DNA of 64,000 bases from Haliotis rubra. Taxonomy: Eukaryota. Each line of letters starts with the position of its first letter. Position 1 is the stretch's first letter. The notes beneath the pieces are model-generated. The model was not told the origin of the DNA, made no database searches, and saw nothing but the letters and a program-made list of their open reading frames with translations. Below are positions 4,477 to 36,910 of the stretch, piece by piece. The DNA is taken from NCBI RefSeq assembly GCF_003918875.1, contig NW_025767210.1:62001-126000 (forward strand). Reading direction: 5' to 3'. The position numbers and the translations under genes are program-made.

Positions 4477-7400
4477 CGCGCGTGCGTGCGTGTGTGTGTG
4501 CGTGTGCGTGTGCGCACAACGTAAAAACTGATACTCATATATCAGCCAATTTCCCCGTATGGGCGTGACGTAAATGTTTTCGCTTTATGAACATACAGTC
4601 ACAGAAAAGACATGGTTGGTCGATCATATTACATAAATCACTTGTATTCTATAGATTGTATTTTACATAAGGAGAACCATTTCAGTATGTACAATGTAAG
4701 GACTTACTGGTTGTAGTGGTTCCTGGCGTGGTTGGACTTGTGGGACCTACAGCCAGAGACAGATATAGTGAGTTGTGTGTATGGTGGAACACTCCTTATA
4801 TATGCTACAGTTTGTCAGTTTCTCTCATAACAGTGCATTTCTGGTGTCCCCGCCGTGATATTGCTGAAATATTGCTAAAAGCGGCGTAAAACCAAACTCA
4901 CTCACTCACTCACTCATAACAGTGAGTGCATAATCTGATGGATGGTGTTTTAGGTGACGTGAACAGACCAAATGCATTTGTCAATATCTTTACGCAGTGT
5001 CTAAAGTTACCTCAGTAAGTGTCAATACATCTGTTCGTAAACATATTCATAGTGACATTGGGTAAGGAGATTATTCCATATACATAGTATCAGCAGCATA
5101 AAGTGCGAATGTTATACTGAGAGACACAAATAAAGAAACACAGGACAATTCAAGTGTTCCTTTAATGGTTTCCAGTTTTCATCACCAGCTGTGAATAGCG
5201 CTGTGGGAGGAAATCTGAGAATAAATAAAAGAAGACTGTCATGAAGTGGTGTTCCCTTATTTGTTTCCCTCAGTATATGTTCCATAAATGATAGCACGGG
5301 ACGGTCTCTATTCGTACCGTATAATACTTACAATGTGAAAACAGGATAATAATATCTTGTTCTTTAGGCTGAGGATGGTGTTTCGTGTGATCATTGAAAG
5401 CATTTCAGTCATTGATATAAACACGAATCTGTCAGCATGATGTTCCTACCTTGACAGGTGGGAGAGTTTATGTCACAGAACTTGATGTTGTCGTTCCACA
5501 CAGTCCCGGGAGGACAGGGGTTGTTGTCAGTGATCTTCTCGCTGACACATCGCACATAAACATTACAACCCTGACAGGACTGGTAGAAGCCATCACCCTT
5601 ACTGCTGCAGTCGCTGACACATTCTGTACAGAGGACGATAATGTGATGCAAACACTATAAACGATGGTGATATAGGTACTGAAGCTCACCCAACAAAAAG
5701 AAAGGAGAATATAGTATAATATAATTTGAAATAAAGGCAGTTTAGCTAAATGCAAATATGATGAGGTTAGTTCAAGGTTGTGAAAATTACTTTCATCACC
5801 ATCAATTTACCATGCTTTAACCTATAGTGTCCCAGTCGTCTAAGGTGCTAATGTGCTGTGGGGAGTTGTACCTCTGTTTGACAGCACCTTACCCGTGTTT
5901 GTGAGATTCACCACAGTGGTAAATACCTGTAATCTCCGTGTCCAACCCCCTCCCCAGCCACATCCCCGCTACATACATCGTGATACAACCGGAATGATGT
6001 TAAAAGCGGCACTAGACAATATCACTCTAAATAGATACATCCATTACTCAATAAGTACCTTTAACTAAATACCTTCATATTGAAATATATTTACTTACGG
6101 CCATTAGAGAGTTGTCCTGCAACAGCGACTGTAATGGGAATTTCATAGGTTTATTTTATACACTATGAAAATAGTTAAGCACCAACCGTTTGATGCATAC
6201 TTTCAAGCCTGATTTGGAATATCTACACCTGGCATTTTTCTCATTGCGGTACATTCGTAACAACTCGCCTCTTTCCGTGACCTACAAGAAGACTCGTACC
6301 CCTATCGTACGCCATTATTGCCAAGAATCGTGGCAAACCAATCAAATCGCGCGTAGTAAAACGCATTTCGAAGCATGAAAATGGCGGCACCGTTGAAGTT
6401 TGAAACTTCGCTGAACTATGCAAAGCACAATTTAAACATAAACTTTGAGCTAAAGGATCAGAAACTGTAAACACTGAAACATATTTACAAAGGGAATGAC
6501 TGTATTGCTCTTTTGCCCACGGGAAAAAGGATATTCTAGGAGCCATGTTTGGAAATTCAGAGTTATCTTTCCTTGGCAATAGTACTAGCCTATTTTAATC
6601 TCCATGCCCGTTTGCGCTTAGACAGGGCCCAGTCGTAAACATGGCCACGAAAAGGGTACGAGACGCCATCCGGCTTGCCGGAATGACACGAGTAGTTACG
6701 AATGATTGCGGTACTGCCCGGGATACTCCAGACCGTCCAGGCAGGTGACGTGTCGCAATAGTTTCAGAGATACCAAACAGACACGGCTAAAATTTGATAT
6801 ATATATTTGCGAAGAGAAACATCACTGTGTTTAAGCATTCATAAAAAAAGGATAATGTTGGCAGAATTTGATAAACTGTGTCTCAACAGAGCAACAGGTT
6901 GTATTCTACAATGAAATTCTGGTAACGATAAATCACGCACGTCTGGAATAATGCATGCTGAATATGAAAATTATACGGTTCCTTACTTGTCGGTGTTGTC
7001 GGTGCCGCGGTAGATGGTCCAGCTGTAGCTCCACCTAGGGACGATATCAAAATGAAATTGATACTTTTATAAAGCATCTTGTTATTGTCCTTGTGGAAGA
7101 TACCCTCAGGCTGCCTCAACTATCCAAATATTCTCTAATCTCATGGTTCTTTGAAAGACGGAAAGTGTCACCTGATCCAAACGCGATTATTTACAGACCG
7201 CTGCAATTTAGCTAGAATATACTTGTTAAACAGCAAGCAGACAACCCAGTGATTCCTGTCATGTTGATGTTTTGTCCCTGTCCGATTCCACCATTGTATC
7301 TCTTCGCCCCTGCACTGTTATTGGGAAAAACTCATATATTCTATAATGACCTCAAAGCACGAATGAATTCTTTATTATTGCTTCTATCCATGGAGATGAA

Positions 7401-20440: not shown

Positions 20441-21872
20441 TGCCCATTCACAGCTAGGTGGACTTGGACACATAGTCACAGTACTTTGTCCAAGTTTACT
20501 GCACGTTGCTCTACCCGCAACTAGGTGTTTGCACGTTTACATGGGGCTACCATCTGGTCATTTACTGACGGATTCGTATGTTCTTGTAAGTGCACAGGGT
20601 TGTGTACTGTACACTAGGGATTGTAACAACACTGACAGAATTTGCACACAAAATTGTCTCCAGGGTTTTTATACCCTTTACATGGGCTCGATTCCGGCAC
20701 CTCAAGCTCGCTAGATCAGTAGCCAGGCGCCTTAGCCAGTTCGCCTTTGCTAAATGTCATCAAGCAGGTCACTGACTCTGACCATGTGATCCATTAAGTC
20801 GTCTAGATTACTTGGAACCAATGGGAAACCGGGAGTCCCCACACGCTAGAAGCAGTGTTTATTATTTGAACACTCTGAATAAAAGTGAAAAAAGAACCCA
20901 TTCCACAATCACAGAGAAGTCCATTGAACTATCATAGCCTTATCGTATCTTTGACAGTGAATGGACTACATTGCAAATGTTGTGGACAGTCATACATGAC
21001 TGAAACCTGTCGACATACGCCCTGTAGAACGATAAGGATACAGGCCCTCCATCTAGAAGGCCGACTTGAGGTCAGGTCTTTCAGAACATTTCAACAACAC
21101 TCCCAGCCACCTTAACTAAGTCACTGGATCAAGTTCAACCTCTGAGACGCTATTCACATCTGTGCAACCATCAGTTTCTTAGTTTTTCCCAGTTAATGTT
21201 AAACAGAATACATACGCTTTACGTTCTGCTCTATGAACTCTTTCTATAGATTCCGCAAACACTGGAATAATCCATTGTACGTAACATTACCTTTCACCAC
21301 ACAACAACTAATATATATTCCCCATCATTCACATGGAGATGTGTTAAACTGCGGCACTGAAGATGTGTTTGTAAAATGTAAAGGTTGTTATCCATAATAC
21401 TCCTTGTAATTATTATGTCCAATTTGTTGAGTTCATATAGGGGTGACAAATGCAAATCATACATTTTATCATTCTCAGATTATTTTAAAAATTAAAACCT
21501 TCAGAAGATTTGTGGTTGAACCTACTATTTGATGGTATTCTAAGAATTACATTCTTACTGTATTGCGTGTGAAAAAGGACTTCTGTCTTTTGTTATCAGG
21601 TGTACTAAGGCCTAATCTTTTACATAACAATATATAACCAGGTCTGAGAATGTACATGTGTGCCATTCGCTCATTTGGCCTTTCAGACAAACTTCCAAGC
21701 AAGCCTATCTGCTGGTGATAACCACATATTTGTCGCTAATGCAAACGTCATTCCGTTCTGTAAATGTGTATCGTGACTGAGATAAAAATGGAATGTCTAG
21801 GTTCCTAAATGCACCAGATCCTATCAGTATAAAACAAATCCTCTACGGCTTGGTTATACCATTCCGATTTCC

Positions 21873-23411: not shown

Positions 23412-25692
23412 GGAAATATCACATGTAAAGGTATATGGATTGAATAAATATTGTCATTTACCGTTTTATCAAATTTTGTTTTGGAAATAGATAAGGTTAC
23501 TAAACCTTTTCCACAATCAACAGAAGTCTCGATTCGATTGTGAGATTCGTATAGTTCCTGGAGCACGTGTGATAATGCCGAGTTTTCATGAACAGTTTAG
23601 TCTGCCCTGCCCCACTGATGGCACACGTCATAAACACATGTAAGGGCAAGTCAATTTGTCACCTTAGAAAAACACCAAAATGTAACATCAGCAACAAAGG
23701 ACCTAGTCTTACGGGCCATAACTTTGGGAACCATCTTTGCATGGTCATAAAAAGCTGCTGGTCTATATAATCTAAATACCGGATGAAAGGTGTAGCTGTT
23801 TTAGAAGCTTCCAGATTACTCTTCACTCAACCTAAACTGTCTTCCAGTGGATCTTAACGGAAATAATTAATACAATTACAACACTGTTCCCTAAAAAATT
23901 ACACTTACACGCGGAAATATTCATCCCTTGAGTGCCTGTTTCTGGACATGCAGAGGGAAGTCAGGGTCCTTGTATGAACCGATGTCTTTTACATGTAATC
24001 GGCAACAAGAAACAAAACATGTTCATGGCACAGGGCCAATCTTTTTTTGCGGCAATCTGATCAGTTGAGAAACGATAATTGGCGTTAAATTTCAGAATTT
24101 CTTCTTGACTTGTAACTGCGAGTTAGTATCTTTCATAATTAGTATATTCTGCTGTGTCTCAAATTTGACTTACTAGTGCCATACGGCTAGGTGCTACGAC
24201 ACATAACAACACTACGATAAGAGCGTGACTATATTTCGTAAATACTGCTCCGAACGTCCAGCTTTTCAATCCTGCGGCTGACATGTATACGATGAAGGTC
24301 ACGTTCGTCAATATTATGCAAATTGGTGTGCCAGGAGCTTGTCGAACGATTCCCCTTAAAACCACGTTTCACTGTAAAAGTGACTCACTGCTGTGGCGGA
24401 TTATGATGTAGTTACATCTCATGTAGTTTTATCTGCGAAGATTTGCAGAACGTTTGACCTTATTTTATAAACAGAATGTTCTAACACGCACACAGACATA
24501 TACACAAATCTCTACATTCCAGTGATTATCTTGATTACGTTAATTGAGTAAGGAGTGTGTCATGTACAAAATGAAATGTTAACTTTTCTCCAGGACTTCC
24601 GATCAGATTTGTGTGTGCGTCCCTCTGCGTGGATTGGCGCGCGCGTGCGCACGTGTGTGTCTTCATGTATTTTTGTTTGTGTGTGTGTGTGTGTCTCCGT
24701 GTGTGTGACTGTGTGACTTTGGTTATTGGTCTTTCTTTCTCTCCCTGTGTGTGTGTGTGTGTGTGTGTGTGTGCCCATTCACAGCTAGGTGGACTTGGAC
24801 ACATAGTCACAGTACTTTGTCCAAGTTTACTGCACGTTGCTCTACCCGCAACTAGGTGTTTGCACGTTTACATGTGGCTACCATCTGGTCATTTACTGAC
24901 GGATTCGTATGTTCTTGTAAGTGCACAGGGTTGTGTACTGTACACTAGGGATTGTAACAACACTGACAGAATTTACACACAAAGTTGTCTCCAGGGTTTT
25001 TTACACCCTTTACATGGGCTCGATTCCGGCACCTCAAGCTCGCTAGATCAGTAGCCAGGCGCCTTAGCCAGTTCGCCCTTGCTAAATGTCATCAAGCAGG
25101 TCACTGACTCTGACCATGTGATCCATTAAGTCGTCTAGATTACTTGGAACCAATGGGAAACCGGGAGTCCCCACACGCTAGAAGCAGTGTTTATTATTTG
25201 AACACTCTAAATAAAAGTGAAAAAAGAACCCATTCCACAATCACAGAGAAGTCCATTGAACTATCATAGCCTTATCGTATCTTTGACAGTGAATGGACTA
25301 CATTGCAAATGTTGTGGACAGTCATACATGACTGAAACCTGTCGACATACGCCCTGTAGAACGATAAGGATACAGGCCCTCCATCTAGAAGGCCGACTTG
25401 AGGTCAGGCCCCGATTTCTCGAAACAAACTTAAGTTTTTACTCAAATTACAAACTGAGTTTGAGATTTTGACTCAGCTGAGTTTCTTACTCAGTTGCGTT
25501 TCTCAAAGCAAACTCAGTCAAAACTCAGCCGAGTTTATAACTCAGAATTTGAGATCGATCTGAGATTATTTTTTATACGTGGTTGAAGCGGCCATGGCGC
25601 GGAAATCAACTTCCGTTTCTAATGTAAACACGGTAGAAGTCGTCTGCTAGCGAAGTTGTCTACCGATAGGATAACGGCAAATAATGTTGAGA

Positions 25693-28247
25693 ATGACTAC
25701 CAGCGGGATGGAACCGAAACGTAGGCCGAACTGGACCGAGGAGGAGCGGCTTACGTTAGTTGATGAGGTGCGGAGGAGGGAGGAACGGTTGTTCGGCAAA
25801 TTTAGGGGGTGTGGAGGGAAGAGGGGGGCGGCGATGAAGGAAGAGGCATGGGAAGAGGCAATGGCGGCGCTAAATGCGTAAGTTACTTTTCGTTGAATGC
25901 ACCCGTAACTAAATTCCCATGAAAAGAATATGATAAATATAACCATAAACAACGTAATCGTGCATGGATGTATCTGACACCTGTGCAAAAACTGAAGGTG
26001 AAAAATTAGGTCAGCAGAGTGCCGAATTAGAGTTACTTGCCCCGTACATTATGACTGCAAGCTTTTGGCCCACGTTAATATTGGGTCACGTTACTCAAAG
26101 TTTTGCAGATTTGTGCTTATTCCTAATGTATTTTTTTTGTCTGGTAAATAATACCACAGTATAGATTTGTTAAAAATCTACTGTGAAAAGTAGTTGTACC
26201 AAATTCATAAGCATGAAATATTTTTTACGAATCCAGACTGTGGTATCGACGAGTGGGTGTGACCATGCAGTACCGTGCCAACATGTATATACATGTATAA
26301 TCAGTCTCACGTTTGTTTTTACAATAGGAAATCGAGTCAAATTAAACGGACGGTAGAGGAAGGGAAGAAACAGTATGCGAACTTGAAGCAAAGAGGTATA
26401 TCATTATACATTTTCTTTATGAAGTTGCTTAGATATTTAAATAAACATTTTCAAGCCTATTTGATGATTATAATGACATTAATGTCACAAATTAATTCTG
26501 TTAGAAATATTTTTTATACATGTAATGTAAACCGAAATGATTAAAATTTAATATCTTTATCAATACCTTGCAAAATATTTTCAGCAAAAGAAAAGAATGA
26601 TGCCAGCCGTCGACCCAAAACAGGAGGAGGGCCCAAACCAGCTTCCCCAACAATGCCAGAAGCTGCCATCCTGGAGACTATGGGGGGAAGGGCAACTCTG
26701 AGTGGTCTAGCAGGAGGCATAGACACTGAAGGTATAACTTATTTCAACTGACTTTGGGCTATAAAAATGGTATTTGCTGCATTTTGTGTAGTTTTAACAA
26801 CACATAAACACATAACTCAAAATAGAGCAATAATTTGTATTTCTTAATTGCATTGATTCACATAAAATATTCATAAAGAGTGTATGAAATAACACAAAAA
26901 CATCACTAAATCTACATATTACATGAGGAAACATTGTTCCTAATTTCACATTATTCAACAGTTAAAAACTGCAATTTTCCCTCAGATATGACTATATGTG
27001 ACCAGGCAATGTTACTATTGGAACAGAACACTTTCTTGACCAAAGTTTTTTTCATACTTTAGCAGCACAAAAAACTGTAAAAATATAAGCCAGTTTGTAT
27101 ATTAACAAGGTGTTATTTGGAAACATAAAACATTAACAATGCTTTATTTAGCAATTTAGCTTCATCACATTTTCCTACTGTAAATGCCATTTCATCATAA
27201 TATTAATAGTAGTAATAATAATGTTCATTTATATGTAGCTCCAAACTCCACATAAGGTATGCCCATAACGCTGACAATGAATAGCACAGCACACCTCAGA
27301 TAAGTGCATTCAAAAATACTGTTTCACTTTCCTCATGAATGTATTTTCAGATTTTGATGTAATTCCTTGTGTTTCGGAGGAAGAACCAAGTGTGTCCATG
27401 GACTTCACTGATACTAATGAGCATGGTTTGTCCACACTTATATACCATTCTTATACTTTATCCATTAAAATAAACTGTAAAATGTGGGACACATTTTTAT
27501 CGTACCATTACATGTTAATGTACTAAAAGATAATTGTCTCTTTAACCATGACATACTGACCAATCAGACTTTGCAATAATAATAAAATGGGACTATTCAT
27601 CTCCCAATAACTACTGTATTATCTGACAAACAGATGACTATTTACATAAAAAAATATATATATAGAAATCTATTGTAACCACTTTTAACATTTATAAATG
27701 AAATGGAACTGTCCTATGAAGAGATACTAAAAAAAATATATATTTGACTTATTGTCTCATTTCTAAATTTATATTGTGATTTATATGATTATAATCTGGC
27801 ATAACTGATATGCTATTCTATAGCAATTCTTTACAATAATAACTGTTGACAATTATTTATATAACAGTTCTTCAAAGTGCAATAAATTTCCTTGTCATGG
27901 AGGAAGGAATACTGCAGATCCCAACTATCGCCGCTGGTACTCCAAAATCAACCACTGTTACCACTACTACTACTGCTACTCCTATTGCAACTACATCTAC
28001 AGCTACAACTGCAACAGCAAATGCCACTAACAATTCCAATCTTCCGCCCAAAAAGAAACTAAAGCTGCAACAGCAGGAAATACTAACCCTACAGGCAGAG
28101 GAATCCAAATTTAAATGTGAAATTGTTAAATTAAAAGAAGAAGCAGAATTTTTCAGGGCAAAGGTAGCATTGATTAAATTAGAACACGAAAAGCTGAAAT
28201 TAGAAATGGAAATACTAAGAAAACAGAACCGTATTAGTGAAGAATAA
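25693..28247 (+). CDS. Harbinger Myb/SANT-like DNA-binding protein (about 284 aa, 5 exons)
   Basis: Exons 25693-25877, 26328-26395, 26585-26731, 27351-27425, 27868-28247 join in frame (855 nt): RRPNWTEEERLTLVDEV...LFG...KEEAWEE...LNA...RTVEEGKKQYANLK...KTGGGP; C-terminal PPKKKLK NLS-like motif and coiled coil. Start could be 25684, 25693 or 25708. Confidence 0.85.
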
Positions 28248-28476
28248 TTGTTAGGGGTGCCAAAAATGAAACATACAACTTTATGGATGAAATTTTCTCT
28301 TTACTGCATAGAATGATGTTTTGATGACTAATATTCATACACGTAATTGTTAATCAAGGCAGATAATCTGTCTTAAGTTATTTTCTGATAATGTACATTT
28401 CTATTCATTACTTGACCAAATATGTTCAACACAGAATGTTCTCATGAGATATATTGTTTAAGCTGTAATGGAATAT

Positions 28477-31400
28477 CTAACTAAAACACTGCTGACACAA
28501 GTGTTTTCGAACATTGTTACCTGTCCAGTCATCAGCTATATGGACACTGACATTTTGATTGGTCTCAATATCAACCTGTTCAACATCTATTATATCTTTT
28601 CTATCAATGCCAATATTATGTAGAATGACACAAGCAGTTACTATTTTGCAGGCATTTTGAGGTGTTGTCCTTAATCCTCTATGTAAACAAGAAAATCTCC
28701 TTTTCAAAATTCCAAAACTCTGCTCAATCAAAACTCTGGTTCTACTGTGACTTCTGTTATATTTCTCTTCAGCATGGGATGATGTGGTTAGGAATGGTGT
28801 CATCAAGTAGGACTTGCATTGATATCCTGAGTCTCCCAACAGTAATCCCTTGTAGGTACCTATAACATATAACAAATCACAATCTGTGTGGATGGTTCTG
28901 TTGACATTCCTATGTAAATTTGCAAACATGAAATATATGAAAATAAAAAAAGATATCCTACGGCTATTAATATTTCCTTCTGAAGTAAGAGAGAGCAAGT
29001 GAGTTTACAATCTTTAACATTGTACCGGTAGTTAAACTGTGGCAAGCTTAGCCTATCAGTGTAAAAATTGAAATGGCCGAGGGCTGGAGCAAAGAGTGTT
29101 GTGAGCATGCAGTGTTATTATTACTGTAGGTAAGACTGAGAGTAAAGCTTAGTATTTAGAGCTGGAAGAATATAATTAAGTAAAAATAGTGGTGGTCCGA
29201 TTAATTGAAATAATCAAATATTGGTCGCAATGACTAAACGACCAAGCAATCGATGTTTTCTCATAATCAAACATTAACAATTTTGGAACATTTGTTTGCA
29301 TTAACATTATTTTTTACAAGGTTGGTTGTGTCTGTTACATTTCATAAGCACTTCCAGCTCGTTTCAAGTCATGACTGAATTTATTATAAAAACTCAAGAA
29401 AAATTATGTTCCTAACATACAAGTTTTGTGCAATTAGTTAAAAAATGTATAAGAACTACACGTTTTCTACTCTATTTTTTGTGCATTAACAAACATATCC
29501 AGGAAAATTTGAATAATGACGTTAACCAAATATTTTCGATAATTGATTGGTTGTAATGAACCAATCATCAGTTAAGAGATTCTAACCAATGCCCAACACT
29601 ATTAGGAAACATAACTAAGCTTCTACCATTTTATCATATAAAACATACCAAGTGTATGACAGGTCTTCTTTTTGTTAAATATAGTAAGTAAATGGAAACG
29701 ATGTCTTACATAGGGATGTCATGATACATAAGTTTCATGAATCGATATGTAACCTGATACCCATGTCATGATTCAATACACAATACAATACCCATTTTCG
29801 CGGCATTATTGCTTAAATTTGGTAACATTTTGAACATTAATGTTGAAATATTGTCCATGAAAAGATCAACATGTTTGATTCTTAGAGATAATAAGTTCTA
29901 ATTTCCCATCTATGTGCATGAAATATAATCTTTTATAACCCTCATAACATCAAAAAACATGATACAATTGATAAATGTAAATATTTATAATATTTAAACC
30001 AATATTTTTAAACATAAATATCAATACAATTGTCAATGTATCGATAATTGTATTGCCTTAGAAAAAGTATCGATGCATTGATGTATCAATGTGTCATGGC
30101 ATCCCAAGTCATACACCTTACTACTTCATATGATGTACCTAATATTGTACCTCATCTTCAGTAAAAAGCTATGTTCATATATAAAATGTACCTACTATTA
30201 ATTCAGAAGAACAGAACCACAATTAATATTTTGTTTGAAAAAAAGTCTTCAAGAATTATTAAATAAACTGTGTTCTTCAAACAGTGTCATTTGGTATTTT
30301 GTTTGTTTATACAGTGGAAGTTATGTTATTACAGTTGCTCTATGAAGTTATACCATTTTCAAACGCAATGCTGATTCTGCTGTCTCTGAAGATGTGACTA
30401 TCATGGACACTCCCTGGCCACTTTGCAACACAGTTGATGAATTTGTATCTCGCATCACATATCATCTGAAAAGTGATTGAAATACTATGTCAGCTTAATA
30501 TAACAATTATTATTTGAAATCAGTAGGTAATTGGTCTTGACTGTTTTGGATTTACATTTGAGCATAAAAGTGACGGAGTTTAGTTTTATGCCAGCGCTTT
30601 TTAGCAATATTCGAGCAATATCATGGCAGGGGACAACAGAATTGAGCTTCACACATTCTACCAGTGTGGTGAGGAATAGGGCAAAATTCAAATTTGACTT
30701 AAGAAGAATTGATATGGTGATAATCTACATTTTGGTGGTAACAGCATAGGTAATGAAATATGTTTTTTTTAATGCTGAAAGTAATTTCATGCCTTGTACA
30801 TGAGAAAAGTGGTTATTAGTTAACATAAACATATTACCTGAACATTGAGTGAATGAAAGCCTTTCCTGTTCAAATAGTCTGCTTCATTCTCAGATGGTGC
30901 CATTAAACGGATGAATGTTCCATCCACACATCCCAGAACATTGGGGAATCCTGAAAAGTACATTTTCCATAATTCACATTTTTTTGATAAATTCATATAT
31001 TATACAATTATTATATAGACATTATTGTATCATTAAGTTTTGGGTGTTTTTTAAACAGTACATCAAGGAATATTTCTGGTTCTTTTCAAGTTTATAAAAA
31101 TATATTTTTATCATATCGTATGGGATATGTCTGTAAAGTTTAATTTTTTCCGACATTGGCAATATCGTTATGTCAGTGGGTCTTACGGGAATTTTTAATA
31201 CGAGTCTCTTCATTTATGCATGATTACATATCGGTTCATCGGAACTAGAAATGACAAGATTGAGAGTAGCCCCCCTTTATTTGACCTAGAATGAGCTTTG
31301 CTACGAAAGGAAGGTAAAAGCAATCAAATACACTCACCTGCAATTTGAAAGAACTGTTTCTTGGTCATGTCGGCATCTTGTCCGCTTGGCATACGTATGA

Positions 31401-31761
31401 AATGCCGGAGATGTTCAATGAGACAAGAGCATACATCCCTGACTGACCGAAACACAGATGAGGTGGAGATGGTCGCATACGTATCGGCGATTAATGAATA
31501 AAAAGACCCAGTGGCCAAGAAACGCAGAGTGACTAGAACTTGCGTTAAGACAGGTAGTGGGTTGCTTCGGATTGAACACCGTTCGAGTTTCCCGCAAACA
31601 AGTGAAACAATAAATAAAATACTCTCAGCACGGAACCGGAACCGCAGAAAGAGCTCCTCTTGTGACATAACCTCGAGAGGGTTCTGTCTGTCAACTAATG
31701 ATCTACTCAAAGTGGATTTACGTTTCACTCTACGGCGTCTACGTCTATTTATCATCGCCAT
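28477..31761 (-). CDS. Harbinger (HARBI1-like) DDE transposase, 343 aa, 4 exons
   Basis: Exons 31338-31761, 30838-30950, 30354-30465, 28477-28859 total 1032 nt with no internal stop. Motifs [78 protein letters not shown]. Confidence 0.92.
29711..30107. mobile_element. hAT-like MITE inside transposase intron 3
   Basis: Imperfect TIRs TAGGGATGTCATGATACAT / ATGTGTCATGGCATCCCAA; 8-bp TSD GTCTTACA / GTCATACA (7/8 match). Confidence 0.65.
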
Positions 31762-32743
31762 TTTGTGATCACCAAAAAACTTAAATCACCTCCCTACCAA
31801 ACTCAAATTGTCAACTCAGTTTGAGTCCAAAATCGAACTCAGTTTTGTTTGAGAAATGCATTTTGCTGAGTTTTCTCAAATTTGAGTAAAAACTCAGACT
31901 TAAGTCTGAAAACAGACTTAAGTTTGTTTCGAGAAATCGGGGCCAGGTCTTTCAGAACATTTCAACAACACTCCCAGCCACCTTAACTAAGTCACTGGAT
32001 CAAGTTCAACCTCTGAGACGCTATTCACATCTGTGCAACCATCAGTTTCTTAGTTTTTCCCAGTTAATGTTAAACAGAATACATACGCTTTACGTTCTGC
32101 TCTATGAACTCTTTCTATAGATTCCGCAAACACTGGAATAATCCATTGTACGTGACATTACCTTTCACCACACAACAACTAATATATATTCCCCATCATT
32201 CACATGGAGATGTGTTAAGATTCGGCATTAAAGATGTGTTTGTAAAATGTAAAGGTTGTTATCCATAATACTCCTTGTAATTATTATGTCCAATTTGTTG
32301 AGTTCATATAGGGGTGAGAGATGCAAATCATATATTTTATCATTCTCAGACTATTTTACAAATTAAAACCTTCAGAAGATTTGTGGTTGAACCTTCTATT
32401 TGATGGTATTCTAAGAATTACATTCTTACTGTATTGCGTGTGAAAAAGGACTTCTGTCTTTTGTTATCAGAAATGCTGAGGCCTAATCTTTTACACAGCA
32501 ATATATAACCAGGTCTGAGAATGTACATGTGTGCCATTCGCTCATTTGGCCTTTCAGACAAAATTCCAAGCAAGCCTATCTGCTGGTGATAACCACATAT
32601 TTGTCGCTAATACCAACGTCATTCAATTCTATAAATGTGTATCGTGACTGAGATACAAATGGAATGTCTAGGTTCCTAAATGCACCAGATCCTATCAGTA
32701 TAAAACAAATCCTCTAGGGCTTGGTTTTACCATTCCGATTTCC

Positions 32744-35480: not shown

Positions 35481-36910
35481 CCCATTCACAGCTAGGTGGA
35501 CTTGGACACATAGTCACAGAACTTTGTCCACGTTTACTGCACGTTGCTCTACCCGCAACTAGGTGTTTGCACGTTTACATCTGGCTACCATCTGGTCATT
35601 TACTGACGGATTCGTATGTTCTTGTAAGTGCACAGGGTTGTGTACTGTACACTAGGGATTGTAACAACACTAAAAGAATTTGCACACAAAGTTGTTTTCA
35701 GGGTTTTTGCACCCTTTACATGGGCTCGATTCCGGCACCTCAAGCTCGCTAGATCAGTAGCCAGGCGCCTTAGCCAGCTCGCCCTTGCTAAATGTCATCA
35801 AGCAGGTCACTGACTCTGACCATGTGATCCATTAAGTCGTCTTGGTTACGTGGAACCAATGGGAAACCGGGAGTCCCCACACGCTAGAAGCAGTGTTTAT
35901 TATTTGAACACTCTAAGTAAAAGTGAAAAAAGAACCCATTCCACAATCACAGAGAAGTCCATTGAACTATCATAGCCTTATCGTATCTTTGACAGTGAAT
36001 GGACTACATTGCAAATGTTGTGGACAGTCATACATGACTGAAACCTGTCGACATACGCCATGTAGAACGATTAGGATACAGGCCCTCCATCTAGAAGGCC
36101 GACTTGAGGTCAGGTCTTTCAGAACATTTCAACAACACTCCCAGCAACCTTGACTAAGTCACTGGATCAAGTTCAACCTCTGAGACGCTATTCACATCTG
36201 TGCAACCATCAGTTTCTTAGTTTTTCCCAGTTAATGTTAAACAGAATACATACGCTTTACGTTCTGCTCTATGAACTCTTTCTATAGATTCCGCAAACAC
36301 TGGAATAATCCATTGTACGTAACATTACCTTTCACCACACAACAACTAATATGTATTCCCAATCATTCACATGGAGATGAGTTAAGATGCGGCACTGAAG
36401 ATGTGTTTGTAAAATGTAAAGGTTGTTATCCATAATACTCCTTGTAATTATTATGTCCAATTTGTTGAGTTCATATAGGGGTGACAAATGCAAATCATAC
36501 ATTTAATCATACTCAGATTATTTTAAAAATTAAAACCTTCAGAAGATTTGTGGTTGAACCTACTATTTGATGGTATTCTAAGAATTACATTCTTACTGTA
36601 TTGCGTGTGAAAAAGGACTTCTGTCTTTTGTTATCAGGTATACTAAGGCCTAATCTTTTACATAACAATATATAACCAGGTCTGAGAATGTACATGTGTG
36701 CCATTCGCTCATTTGGCCTTTCAGACAAAATTCCAAGCAAGCCTATCTGCTGGTGATAACCACATATTTGTCGCTAATGCAAACGTCATTCCGTTCTGTA
36801 AATGTGTATCGTGATTGAGATAAAAATGGAATGTCTAGGTTCCTAAATGCACCAGATCCTATCAGTATAAAACAAATCCTCTAGGGCTTGGTTATACCAT
36901 TCCGATTTCC

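What the first reader, a model, noticed from the sequence alone, without database searches (positions are those of the whole stretch)
25408..31943. Apparently intact, recently inserted autonomous Harbinger transposon with both genes open
Seen: perfect 28-bp TIRs and an exact CAG TSD, verifiable because the paralogous spacers give the empty site. The spliced transposase (343 aa, DGT/GDSGY/IEQ catalytic triad) and the convergent 5-exon Myb gene both reconstruct without stops or frameshifts. It is present in only one of three near-identical inner spacers, so it postdates the duplications. Knowledge: Harbinger transposition needs both proteins, and most animal copies described are defective. Inference: a candidate active element and potential genetic tool.
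Basis: partly seen in the sequence, partly recalled or inferred. Interest (0 to 1): 0.7.

Follow-up and report, generated by a model that had tools for sequence, protein, structure and literature searches.

The report
Intact-looking Harbinger transposon in abalone
This is a real, structurally complete two-gene "cut-and-paste" Harbinger transposon inserted between duplicated sulfatase genes of what is almost certainly the blacklip abalone genome. It belongs to an already described type, and nothing yet shows that this copy can still jump.

Summary
Window 25408-31943 is a 6,536-bp element with perfect 28-bp terminal inverted repeats and an exact CAG duplication. Two paralogous spacers show the uninterrupted site.

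A 4-exon DDE_Tnp_4 transposase (343 aa) and a convergent 5-exon Myb/SANT gene (287 aa) are both open, with GT-AG at all seven introns.

New context:
- The CWG target places it with the "NuwaI" group of the PIF/Harbinger (PHIS) superfamily (Han 2015).
- The genome (Haliotis rubra by assembly size and contig match) holds about 11 transposase-bearing copies.
- The same terminal repeat occurs 2,758 times, which corresponds to about 1,400 Tourist-like MITEs of 210-283 bp.
- A sister autonomous family at about 60% protein identity carries the same terminal repeat.

"Recent" and "active" are not shown:
- The nearest copy differs by 1.4%, and the host spacers differ by 2.5-3%.
- This copy carries private amino-acid changes, including P→Q in the conserved GDSGYP motif.
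- One presumed-RNA contig confirms one transposase splice junction, but it comes from another copy.
- The Myb exons appear only in unspliced contigs.
- A second copy (C2704) also has both genes open.

Intact two-gene Harbingers are already known in animals. This is a new member of a known kind.

The parts
25405..25407 (.). Left target-site duplication, CAG
   Evidence: The paralogous empty sites carry a single CAG.
25408..25435 (+). Left terminal inverted repeat, 28 bp, perfect match to the right one
   Evidence: The 27-mer occurs 947 times exactly and 2,758 times with up to 3 mismatches in the genome, against 0 for the control.
25436..25560 (.). Left subterminal region with five AACTCAG/CTGAGTT motifs; candidate binding sites for the Myb protein (inferred)
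   Evidence: 9 of the 13 window matches lie within about 140 bp of the two ends. CTGAGTT at position 47 is kept in 14 of 14 MITEs.
25684..25877 (+). Myb gene exon 1 (ATG at 25684; Myb_DNA-bind_5 positions 1-50)
   Evidence: E 2e-7. Homologues align up to 25875-25878.
26328..26395 (+). Myb gene exon 2 (Myb_DNA-bind_5 positions 52-71)
   Evidence: weak alone, but in register. (77% identity in the sister family; homologues align).
26585..26731 (+). Myb gene exon 3 (RPKTGGGP ... GIDTE motifs shared with homologues)
27351..27425 (+). Myb gene exon 4 (24 aa, acidic); the least supported exon
   Evidence: Supported only by GT-AG sites, phase compatibility and conservation among copies. Not detected by tblastn.
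27648..27729 (.). 82-bp segment in Myb intron 4 private to this copy, flanked by a 14-bp direct repeat
   Evidence: Absent from all other copies and skipped by DNA contigs of runs X1 and X4 (joint 27647>27730).
27868..28247 (+). Myb gene exon 5 (Thr-rich tract, PPKKKLK basic patch, C-terminal coiled coil, stop TAA)
   Evidence: The C-terminal part aligns to homologues and to the sister family.
28477..28859 (-). Transposase exon 4 (second D in GDSGY, E in IEQ; DDE_Tnp_4 positions 75-158; stop TAG)
   Evidence: E 3e-20; D and E invariant in 13 sequences; spliced contig.
29187..30108 (.). Two nested interspersed repeats inside transposase intron 3 (about 29187-29600 and 29711-30108), present in all family copies
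   Evidence: many loci at 82-85%. (very high depth, loose ends at 29187 and 29711).
30354..30465 (-). Transposase exon 3 (DDE_Tnp_4 positions 35-69)
   Evidence: In one search, run X11 record 12 joins it to exon 4.
30838..30950 (-). Transposase exon 2 (first catalytic D in VDGT; DDE_Tnp_4 positions 1-36)
31338..31761 (-). Transposase exon 1 (ATG at 31761; basic [11 protein letters not shown]-terminus; no Pfam domain but conserved)
   Evidence: relatives at 43-69%, one of them from Haliotis rubra. (11 loci in the genome).
31916..31943 (-). Right terminal inverted repeat, 28 bp
31944..31946 (.). Right target-site duplication, CAG
21073..21075 (.). Paralogous empty site in spacer 1-2
36111..36113 (.). 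Paralogous empty site in spacer 3-4

Best explanation
A structurally complete autonomous DNA transposon of the PIF/Harbinger (PHIS) superfamily, of the CWG-targeting 'NuwaI' type. It sits 0.8 kb upstream of the third gene in a tandem array of four intronless sulfatase genes, in what is almost certainly the Haliotis rubra assembly.

Inferred mechanism, by analogy with Ping/Pong and Harbinger3_DR:
- The Myb/SANT protein binds the repeated AACTCAG motifs next to the 28-bp terminal repeats and recruits the DDE transposase.
- The transposase cuts the element out and pastes it into a CWG site, duplicating 3 bp.

The same ends are carried by about 1,400 short MITEs and by a sister autonomous family, so the proteins of this group have mobilised many non-coding passengers.

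This copy entered the middle spacer after the array duplicated, so it is younger than about 2.5-3% paralogue divergence. It belongs to a moderately young family with 1-2.8% pairwise substitutions. Whether this copy, or any copy, still transposes is not shown. Open frames are necessary for activity but do not prove it.
For: Structure:
- Terminal repeats, target duplication and empty sites.
- DDE_Tnp_4 pieces in register across exons 2-4, and Myb_DNA-bind_5 across Myb exons 1-2.
- Both frames open, with GT-AG at all 7 introns.
- The catalytic D and E fall in invariant columns.

Target: CWG duplications in 5 of 9 large copies checked besides the window copy and in 11 of 14 MITEs.

Family census:
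- 7 near-full copies at 0.96-2.8% substitutions.
- 11 loci carry transposase exon 1.
- The terminal 27-mer occurs 2,758 times, control 0, mostly as pairs 210-283 bp apart. These are built from element positions 1-100 plus 6365-6536.

Gene models:
- The sister family L059/L060 keeps Myb exons 1, 2, 3, 5 and transposase exons 1-4 as separate conserved blocks in the same order and orientation.
- Full-length homologues align block by block to the predicted Myb exons.
- Synonymous changes are in excess among copies: pN/pS 0.43 and 0.38.
- A presumed-RNA contig joins 28856|30351. This equals the predicted intron 28860-30353 within a 3-nt TAC ambiguity.

Organism:
- Assembly size and scaffold count match PMC6774278.
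- P0007, 'putative nuclease HARBI1 [Haliotis rubra]', lies on a 703,663-bp contig, the same length as C2394.

Type: Han 2015 defines NuwaI by CWG duplications plus DDE and Myb/SANT ORFs.
Against: - No copy is identical or nearly identical to this one. The nearest differs at 90 sites, so there is no sign of a very recent burst.
- The MITEs are on average 7% apart. Only 34% of detectable ends are perfect.
- The transposase of this copy has private changes L3M, N64I, R203H, P230Q and S277R. P230 is P in 11 of 12 homologues.
- No presumed-RNA contig covers transposase exons 1-2, and Myb exons 2-4 appear only in unspliced contigs.
- The 'RNA' label of those runs is a guess, and they come from a different species label than the best DNA holder.
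- The assembly is Nanopore-based with Pilon polishing. The other copies carry many 1-bp indels, and only 11 of 41 window-private substitutions are transitions. Single-base details of any copy may therefore be assembly errors.
- Placement of the transposase in the NuwaI clade by phylogeny was not tested.
Confidence: 0.85

Rival explanations
1. One reading: this very copy is transposition-competent now and inserted very recently, so it is a ready-made natural two-component tool.
For: Both frames are open and all splice sites are canonical. The terminal repeats and duplication are perfect. The catalytic residues are kept. It is absent from two paralogous spacers. The family is transcribed and spliced in at least one sample. 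A large MITE family shows that the group's proteins have worked.
Against: There are private non-synonymous changes at conserved positions, P230Q and R203H. The nearest relative is 1.4% away. The spliced contig carries the other copies' bases at 28678, 28820 and 30395, so it does not come from this copy. There is no evidence of insertion polymorphism. The age bound is only the 2.5-3% spacer divergence.
Confidence: 0.12
2. The copy is an inert relic. The frames are open by chance or by recency, but the transposase is crippled by missense changes and/or the element is silenced. The convergent genes lie 229 bp apart and could yield antisense RNA (inference).
For: The private changes in the transposase run 5 non-synonymous to 1 synonymous, as expected for neutral decay. 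The P→Q change lies in GDSGYP. No presumed-RNA contigs cover exons 1-2, and the Myb coverage is unspliced. Most sister copies carry stops or frameshifts.
Against: Some private changes may be assembly errors, given the transversion excess. One homologue tolerates H at the R203 position. Coverage in the presumed-RNA runs is very thin, at depth 3-4.
Confidence: 0.5
3. It is a pair of domesticated host genes (HARBI1-like nuclease plus NAIF1/MSANTD-like Myb protein), not a mobile element.
For: NCBI names a sister copy 'putative nuclease HARBI1'.
Against: It has terminal repeats and a 3-bp duplication. Empty paralogous sites exist. There are about 11 dispersed copies with their own duplications, and thousands of MITE ends.
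Confidence: 0.01
4. The insertion is an assembly artefact, for example a repeat copy misplaced into the sulfatase array by the long-read meta-assembly.
For: The assembly is a merged Nanopore and hybrid assembly, and the locus is a tandem array. No reads were laid across the junctions.
Against: A misjoin would not create an exact 3-bp duplication of the very trinucleotide present once in the paralogues. Nor would it leave both flanks collinear with them.
Confidence: 0.03

Closest known systems
NuwaI group of the PHIS (PIF/Harbinger-ISL2EU-Spy) superfamily (Han et al. 2015, PMC4482050)
   Same: 5'-CWG-3' 3-bp target duplication confirmed by paralogous empty sites. Two genes: a DDE transposase and a Myb/SANT protein. 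The terminal repeats fall within the 12-61 bp range. Animal host; one mollusc was already listed.
   Different: The terminal repeat starts GCC rather than the usual GGG. At 6.5 kb it is longer than the 4.5-kb average, because the introns carry nested repeats. Clade membership by phylogeny was not tested here.
Ping / Pong / mPing of rice (Hancock et al. 2010, PMC2836001)
   Same: Two separate proteins. A Tourist-like MITE shares the terminal repeats. Two autonomous families with diverged proteins share ends with one MITE: about 60% identity here, against 62% and 77% for Ping and Pong.
   Different: The target is CWG, not TAA/TTA. The host is an animal. The genes are convergent and rich in introns. 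Mobility is not demonstrated here.
Harbinger3_DR of zebrafish (Sinzelle et al. 2008, as summarised in PMC2836001 and PMC13668399)
   Same: An animal Harbinger with a DDE transposase plus a Myb-like partner that binds the element ends and interacts with the transposase.
   Different: Harbinger3_DR had to be rebuilt from defective copies. Here natural copies have open frames. This transposase has a strongly basic N-terminus ([10 protein letters not shown]), so it may not depend on the partner for nuclear import (inference).
Harbinger-Snek of sea kraits, with marine relatives in sea urchins, fish and bivalves (bioRxiv 10.1101/2021.06.13.448261)
   Same: Intact two-gene copies, solo-gene deletion derivatives and short non-coding derivatives with the same ends coexist. 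The hosts are marine.
   Different: Copy numbers are far lower here. No evidence for horizontal transfer was sought.

Membership tests
PIF/Harbinger (PHIS) superfamily | DDE transposase of the IS5-like DDE_Tnp_4 type with an intact D-D-E triad | tested here: met
   Pfam PF13359 is matched in register by exons 2, 3 and 4 (1-36, 35-69, 75-158 of 158). The second D and the E fall in invariant columns.
PIF/Harbinger (PHIS) superfamily | [quoted passage not shown] | tested here: met
   PF13873 is matched by exon 1 (positions 1-50, E 2e-7) and exon 2 (52-71). The architecture is shared with homologues.
PIF/Harbinger (PHIS) superfamily | Terminal inverted repeats and a 3-bp target-site duplication | tested here: met
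PIF/Harbinger (PHIS) superfamily | Tourist-like MITEs sharing the ends | tested here: met
   2,758 terminal-repeat matches against 0 in the control. 14 sampled MITEs of 210-283 bp are built from the two ends.
PIF/Harbinger (PHIS) superfamily | Transposition requires both proteins | not testable with these tools
   Needs an excision and integration assay.
NuwaI group (Han 2015) | Target-site duplication 5'-CWG-3' | tested here: met
   Window copy: CAG. Large copies: CTG, CAG and one CCG. MITEs: 8 CTG and 3 CAG perfect out of 14.
NuwaI group (Han 2015) | Terminal repeats of 12-61 bp, usually starting GGG | tested here: inconclusive
   The length of 28 bp fits. The first bases are GCC, not GGG. 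The paper says 'usually'.
NuwaI group (Han 2015) | DDE domain falls in the NuwaI/NuwaII clade | not tested
   No reference NuwaI sequences were on hand.
Canonical PIF/Harbinger group | Target-site duplication TWA | tested here: not met
   No TWA pair among the window copy, the 9 other large copies checked or the 14 MITEs.
Domesticated HARBI1 / NAIF1-type host genes | Single-copy, immobile, no terminal repeats or duplication | tested here: not met
   Terminal repeats, a duplication, empty sites and multiple dispersed copies are present.

The most novel reading that the evidence does not exclude
The group is still mobile in living abalone. The group comprises this family, its sister family with the same ends, and about 1,400 MITEs. 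At least one natural copy pair would then supply working transposase and Myb protein. That would give a naturally active, CWG-targeting two-protein Harbinger system in a mollusc, usable for insertional genetics in a phylum with few such tools.
Probability: 0.2. Interest if true: 0.55.

Novelty: new member of a known kind. Interest (0 to 1): 0.3.

Why it matters
Taken as found, it is a well-preserved example of a known transposon type. It is useful mainly for repeat annotation of abalone genomes, where NCBI labels such copies 'putative nuclease HARBI1'. It also offers a clean case of an autonomous element, a MITE family and a sister family sharing one set of ends. If any copy proved active, it would be a natural two-component transposon for molluscs and a model for cross-mobilisation. 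The insertion lies 0.8 kb upstream of a sulfatase gene and could affect that paralogue's regulation.

Tried and rejected
- Rfam and tRNA scans of the window found nothing, so the host array is not an RNA gene array.
- Earlier scan notes: none for this place or for these words.
- A word search with Myb exon 5 gave no hit in the permitted length range, which says nothing about longer proteins.
- A PDB sequence search with transposase exon 4 gave no solved relative.
- I looked for an allelic haplotig that might show an empty site. The left flank occurs only in this contig, so there was no polymorphism test.
- Insertion polymorphism from reads was not attempted.
- MITE origin: the MITE interiors are no closer to the sister family than to this one (78-90% against 81-88%), so neither can be named the parent.
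- Dating from perfect terminal repeats was rejected as powerless. About 0.7 changes are expected in 56 bp at the bounding divergence.
- The spliced (joined) proteins were never sent to any search, fold or look-up tool. Each exon was searched by reference, and frame continuity and codon statistics were computed locally. Whole-protein searches, structure prediction and exact-sequence look-ups were therefore left out.
- No consensus of the copies was built.
Full report
**What is at the coordinates**

The element runs from 25408 to 31943 (6,536 bp). Its outer 28 bp are perfect inverted repeats, and the complementarity continues at 82% over 55 nt. CAG stands immediately outside both ends.

The surroundings are a tandem array of about 4.3-kb units. 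Each unit holds an intronless ORF of about 510 aa with a Pfam Sulfatase domain. There are four genes and three inner spacers.

Aligning the two flanks with the two other spacers shows the uninterrupted sequence GAGGT-CAG-GTCTTTCAG, with a single CAG at 21073-21075 and 36111-36113. The 3-bp duplication and the exact boundaries are therefore verified, not merely plausible. A one-base shift (AGG) also fits this site, but it is excluded by the other copies and the MITEs, which all show CWG next to GCCCCG.

The spacers differ from each other by 2.5-3.0%, so "near-identical" is generous.

**Gene models**

The transposase lies on the minus strand:
- Four exons (31761-31338, 30950-30838, 30465-30354, 28859-28477) join in frame into 343 codons.
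- The boundaries are CAG|GTGAGT-type donors and polypyrimidine-AG acceptors.
- Searched exon by exon, exons 2, 3 and 4 match Pfam DDE_Tnp_4 at model positions 1-36, 35-69 and 75-158 of 158, which is consecutive register.
- Exon 1 has no Pfam domain. It has relatives at 43-69% identity, including a Haliotis rubra protein.
- In an alignment of exon 4 with 12 relatives, the D of GDSGY and the E of IEQ are invariant, and the reading frame runs to the homologous C-terminus.

The Myb gene lies on the plus strand:
- Five exons (25684-25877, 26328-26395, 26585-26731, 27351-27425, 27868-28247) give 287 codons, all with GT-AG introns.
- Exon 1 matches Myb_DNA-bind_5 positions 1-50, and exon 2 matches positions 52-71.
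- The stop codons of the two convergent genes are 229 bp apart.

Joining was done only locally, to check frames and codon statistics.

**Independent support for the exons**

1. A sister family in the same genome (L058-L061) shares the terminal repeat. Its proteins are only about 55-62% identical in the longer exons, and 75-81% in the short exons M2, T2 and T3. It shows Myb exons 1, 2, 3, 5 and transposase exons 4, 3, 2, 1 as separate conserved blocks. Their order, orientation and spacing are the same, and the DNA between them is unconserved.
2. The one whole-library search was run with Myb exon 1, after Pfam and the word search had left exons 3-5 open. It returned full-length relatives of 170-284 aa. 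Locally, these align block by block to 25681-25878, 26317-26400, 26584-26748 and 27882-28235. They share the layout: Myb domain, RPKTGGGP, G-x-DTE, acidic linker, basic patch, coiled coil.
3. P0058 is 95% identical and uses the same exon 1-2 and 2-3 junctions.
4. Exon 4 (24 aa) is supported only by its splice sites, its phase and its conservation among copies.
5. Among the seven near-full copies, synonymous changes are in excess. Pooled pN/pS is 0.43 for the transposase and 0.38 for Myb. Counting each variable site once, p is 0.044 and 0.0003, uncorrected for transition bias.

**Transcript evidence**

All four runs were Logan contigs, and the "RNA" label of X11 and X12 is a guess.

- One 311-nt contig of X11 lies on 28659-28856 and continues at 30351-30463. 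Because TAC occurs on both sides, this equals the predicted junction 28859|30354 (transposase intron 3). No such joint is listed for the DNA runs, though 7 joints were not shown.
- That contig differs from the window at exactly three places: 28678, 28820 and 30395. These are the window copy's private codon changes, so the transcript came from another copy. It also came from a different species label (organism B).
- No contig of X11 or X12 lies on transposase exons 1-2.
- Myb exons 2, 3 and 4 are covered only by contigs that run into the introns on both sides (26251-26410, 26571-26864, 27241-27501). These could be unspliced RNA or DNA carry-over.

In total, one of seven junctions is confirmed, and none is contradicted by an alternative junction.

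**The family**

The genome has 1,378,282,171 bases in 2,855 contigs. This matches the published Haliotis rubra assembly (1,378,265,264 bp, 2,854 scaffolds; Nanopore with Racon/Pilon polishing; PMC6774278). A RefSeq protein named "putative nuclease HARBI1 [Haliotis rubra]" is 98% identical to exon 4. It lies on a contig of 703,663 bp, the length of C2394, which holds a sister copy.

Copies in the genome:
- Six other near-full copies exist, on C2704, C2394, C2369, C2409, C349 and C597. There are also older and deleted ones on C2754, C835, C1757 and C2204.
- Eleven loci carry transposase exon 1.
- Pairwise substitution divergence is 0.96-2.8%. The window copy is 1.40% from its nearest relative.
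- As assembled, C2704 also has both genes open. C349 has only the transposase open. C597 has only Myb open. The rest have stops or frameshifts.
- Three copies carry so many 1-bp indels that assembly noise is likely, so the broken state of sister copies is not secure.

Duplications are CTG/CTG, CAG/CAG and once CCG/CCG.

**MITEs and the sister family**

- The terminal 27-mer occurs 2,758 times with up to 3 mismatches and 947 times exactly. The reversed control occurs 0 times.
- Most occurrences form inverted pairs 210-283 bp apart.
- Fourteen sampled MITEs consist of element positions 1-100 plus 6365-6536. Their terminal repeats are identical over 28 of 28 bp, and their interiors are 81-88% identical to the element.
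- The MITEs are 93% identical to each other on average, with a 96-98% subgroup. Perfect CWG duplications occur in 11 of 14.
- The MITE interiors are no closer to the sister family.
- AACTCAG/CTGAGTT is concentrated in the subterminal 140 bp (9 of 13 window matches). The copy at position 47 is kept in all MITEs. It is the obvious candidate site for the Myb protein, but this is inference.
- The arrangement parallels Ping, Pong and mPing. There, proteins 62% and 77% identical both mobilise one MITE, both proteins are required, and excision is usually precise (PMC2836001).
- Precise excision means the empty paralogous sites cannot strictly exclude earlier presence and loss. Later insertion is simply more parsimonious.

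**Classification**

Han et al. 2015 (PMC4482050) defined the NuwaI group of the PHIS superfamily by CWG duplications, shown there too by paralogous empty sites. The group has a DDE ORF plus a Myb/SANT ORF and terminal repeats of 12-61 bp. It is found in animals, including one mollusc, and 11 of its families have two intact ORFs.

The present element meets these features, except that its repeat starts GCC rather than the usual GGG. Its place in the tree was not tested.

**Is it recent or active?**

- The only firm bound is that it is younger than the spacers' 2.5-3% divergence.
- The window copy has 41 private substitutions in 5,869 shared columns (0.70%).
- In the transposase, six codons are private, and five of them change the amino acid: L3M, N64I, R203H, P230Q and S277R. 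P230 is the P of GDSGYP, kept in 11 of 12 relatives.
- DNA contigs of both species labels, and the presumed-RNA contigs, show only the P codon there.
- Only 11 of the 41 private changes are transitions, so some may be assembly errors.

Either way, the sequence of this copy cannot be taken at face value. An open frame is not evidence of activity.

**Known or new**

Intact two-gene Harbingers are documented in many animals, and an active family was shown genetically in a nematode. I found no paper on Harbingers in abalone beyond repeat tables.

The finding is a correct and careful observation of an ordinary, well-preserved transposon. It is a new member of a known kind, with a modest chance that the group is still mobile.

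Noticed in passing
L058-L061 (G000 C165:208500-217500, C591:531500-541000, C2474:99000-108300, C2389:2873000-2882300): A sister autonomous Harbinger family has the same 27-bp terminal repeat, exact in two of the four loci. Its termini are 86-89% identical in DNA over about 100-170 bp, but its proteins are only about 55-62% identical in the long exons. The ends are far better conserved than the genes. This suggests strong constraint on the ends, or exchange of ends between families or with the MITEs.
   Followed up: partly
Genome-wide; examples L043-L056: About 1,400 Tourist-like MITEs of 210-283 bp share the element's terminal repeats and CWG duplications. A 2.2-kb derivative (L057) has MITE ends around unrelated DNA.
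   Followed up: partly
window 17507-38443: A tandem array of four intronless sulfatase genes (Pfam Sulfatase plus SGSH_C), 2.9-4.6% apart in DNA. The transposon lies 797 bp upstream of the start codon of the third gene.
   Followed up: partly
window 27648-27729: An 82-bp segment in Myb intron 4, flanked by a 14-bp direct repeat, is private to this copy. It is absent from every other copy and from the DNA contigs of two species labels.
   Followed up: yes
window 29187-29600, 29711-30108, 30599-30631: Other interspersed repeats lie inside the transposase introns and are shared by all family copies. A 33-bp piece at 30599-30631 belongs to an extremely abundant repeat, with contig depth up to 1.2 million in one run. 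The long intron 3 is largely made of such insertions.
   Followed up: no
window 24771-25078: A repeat of about 310 bp in the sulfatase spacer has dozens of copies at 88-90% identity across the genome. It looks SINE-like.
   Followed up: no
L037 (G000 C1757:1301300-1305400): An internally deleted copy of the element sits directly next to a MITE-like element, and the two share one CAG between their ends. This is either a tandem or nested insertion into the duplication of the other.
   Followed up: no
L032, L034, L035 (copies on C2394, C2409, C349): These copies carry 37-68 indel events per pairwise comparison, mostly of 1 bp, alongside 68-182 substitutions in most pairs. That ratio is typical of unpolished long-read consensus in repeats, so the frameshifts in these copies may not be real.
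   Followed up: partly
window 41415-41900 (minus strand): An ORF with Tc1/mariner-type HTH domains (HTH_29, HTH_Tnp_Tc3_2). It is the N-terminal part of another DNA-transposon transposase.
   Followed up: no
window 53100-55000: A long minisatellite with units of about 31 bp (54 or more register matches). N-masked stretches lie at about 50.1-52.1 kb and were left untouched.
   Followed up: no
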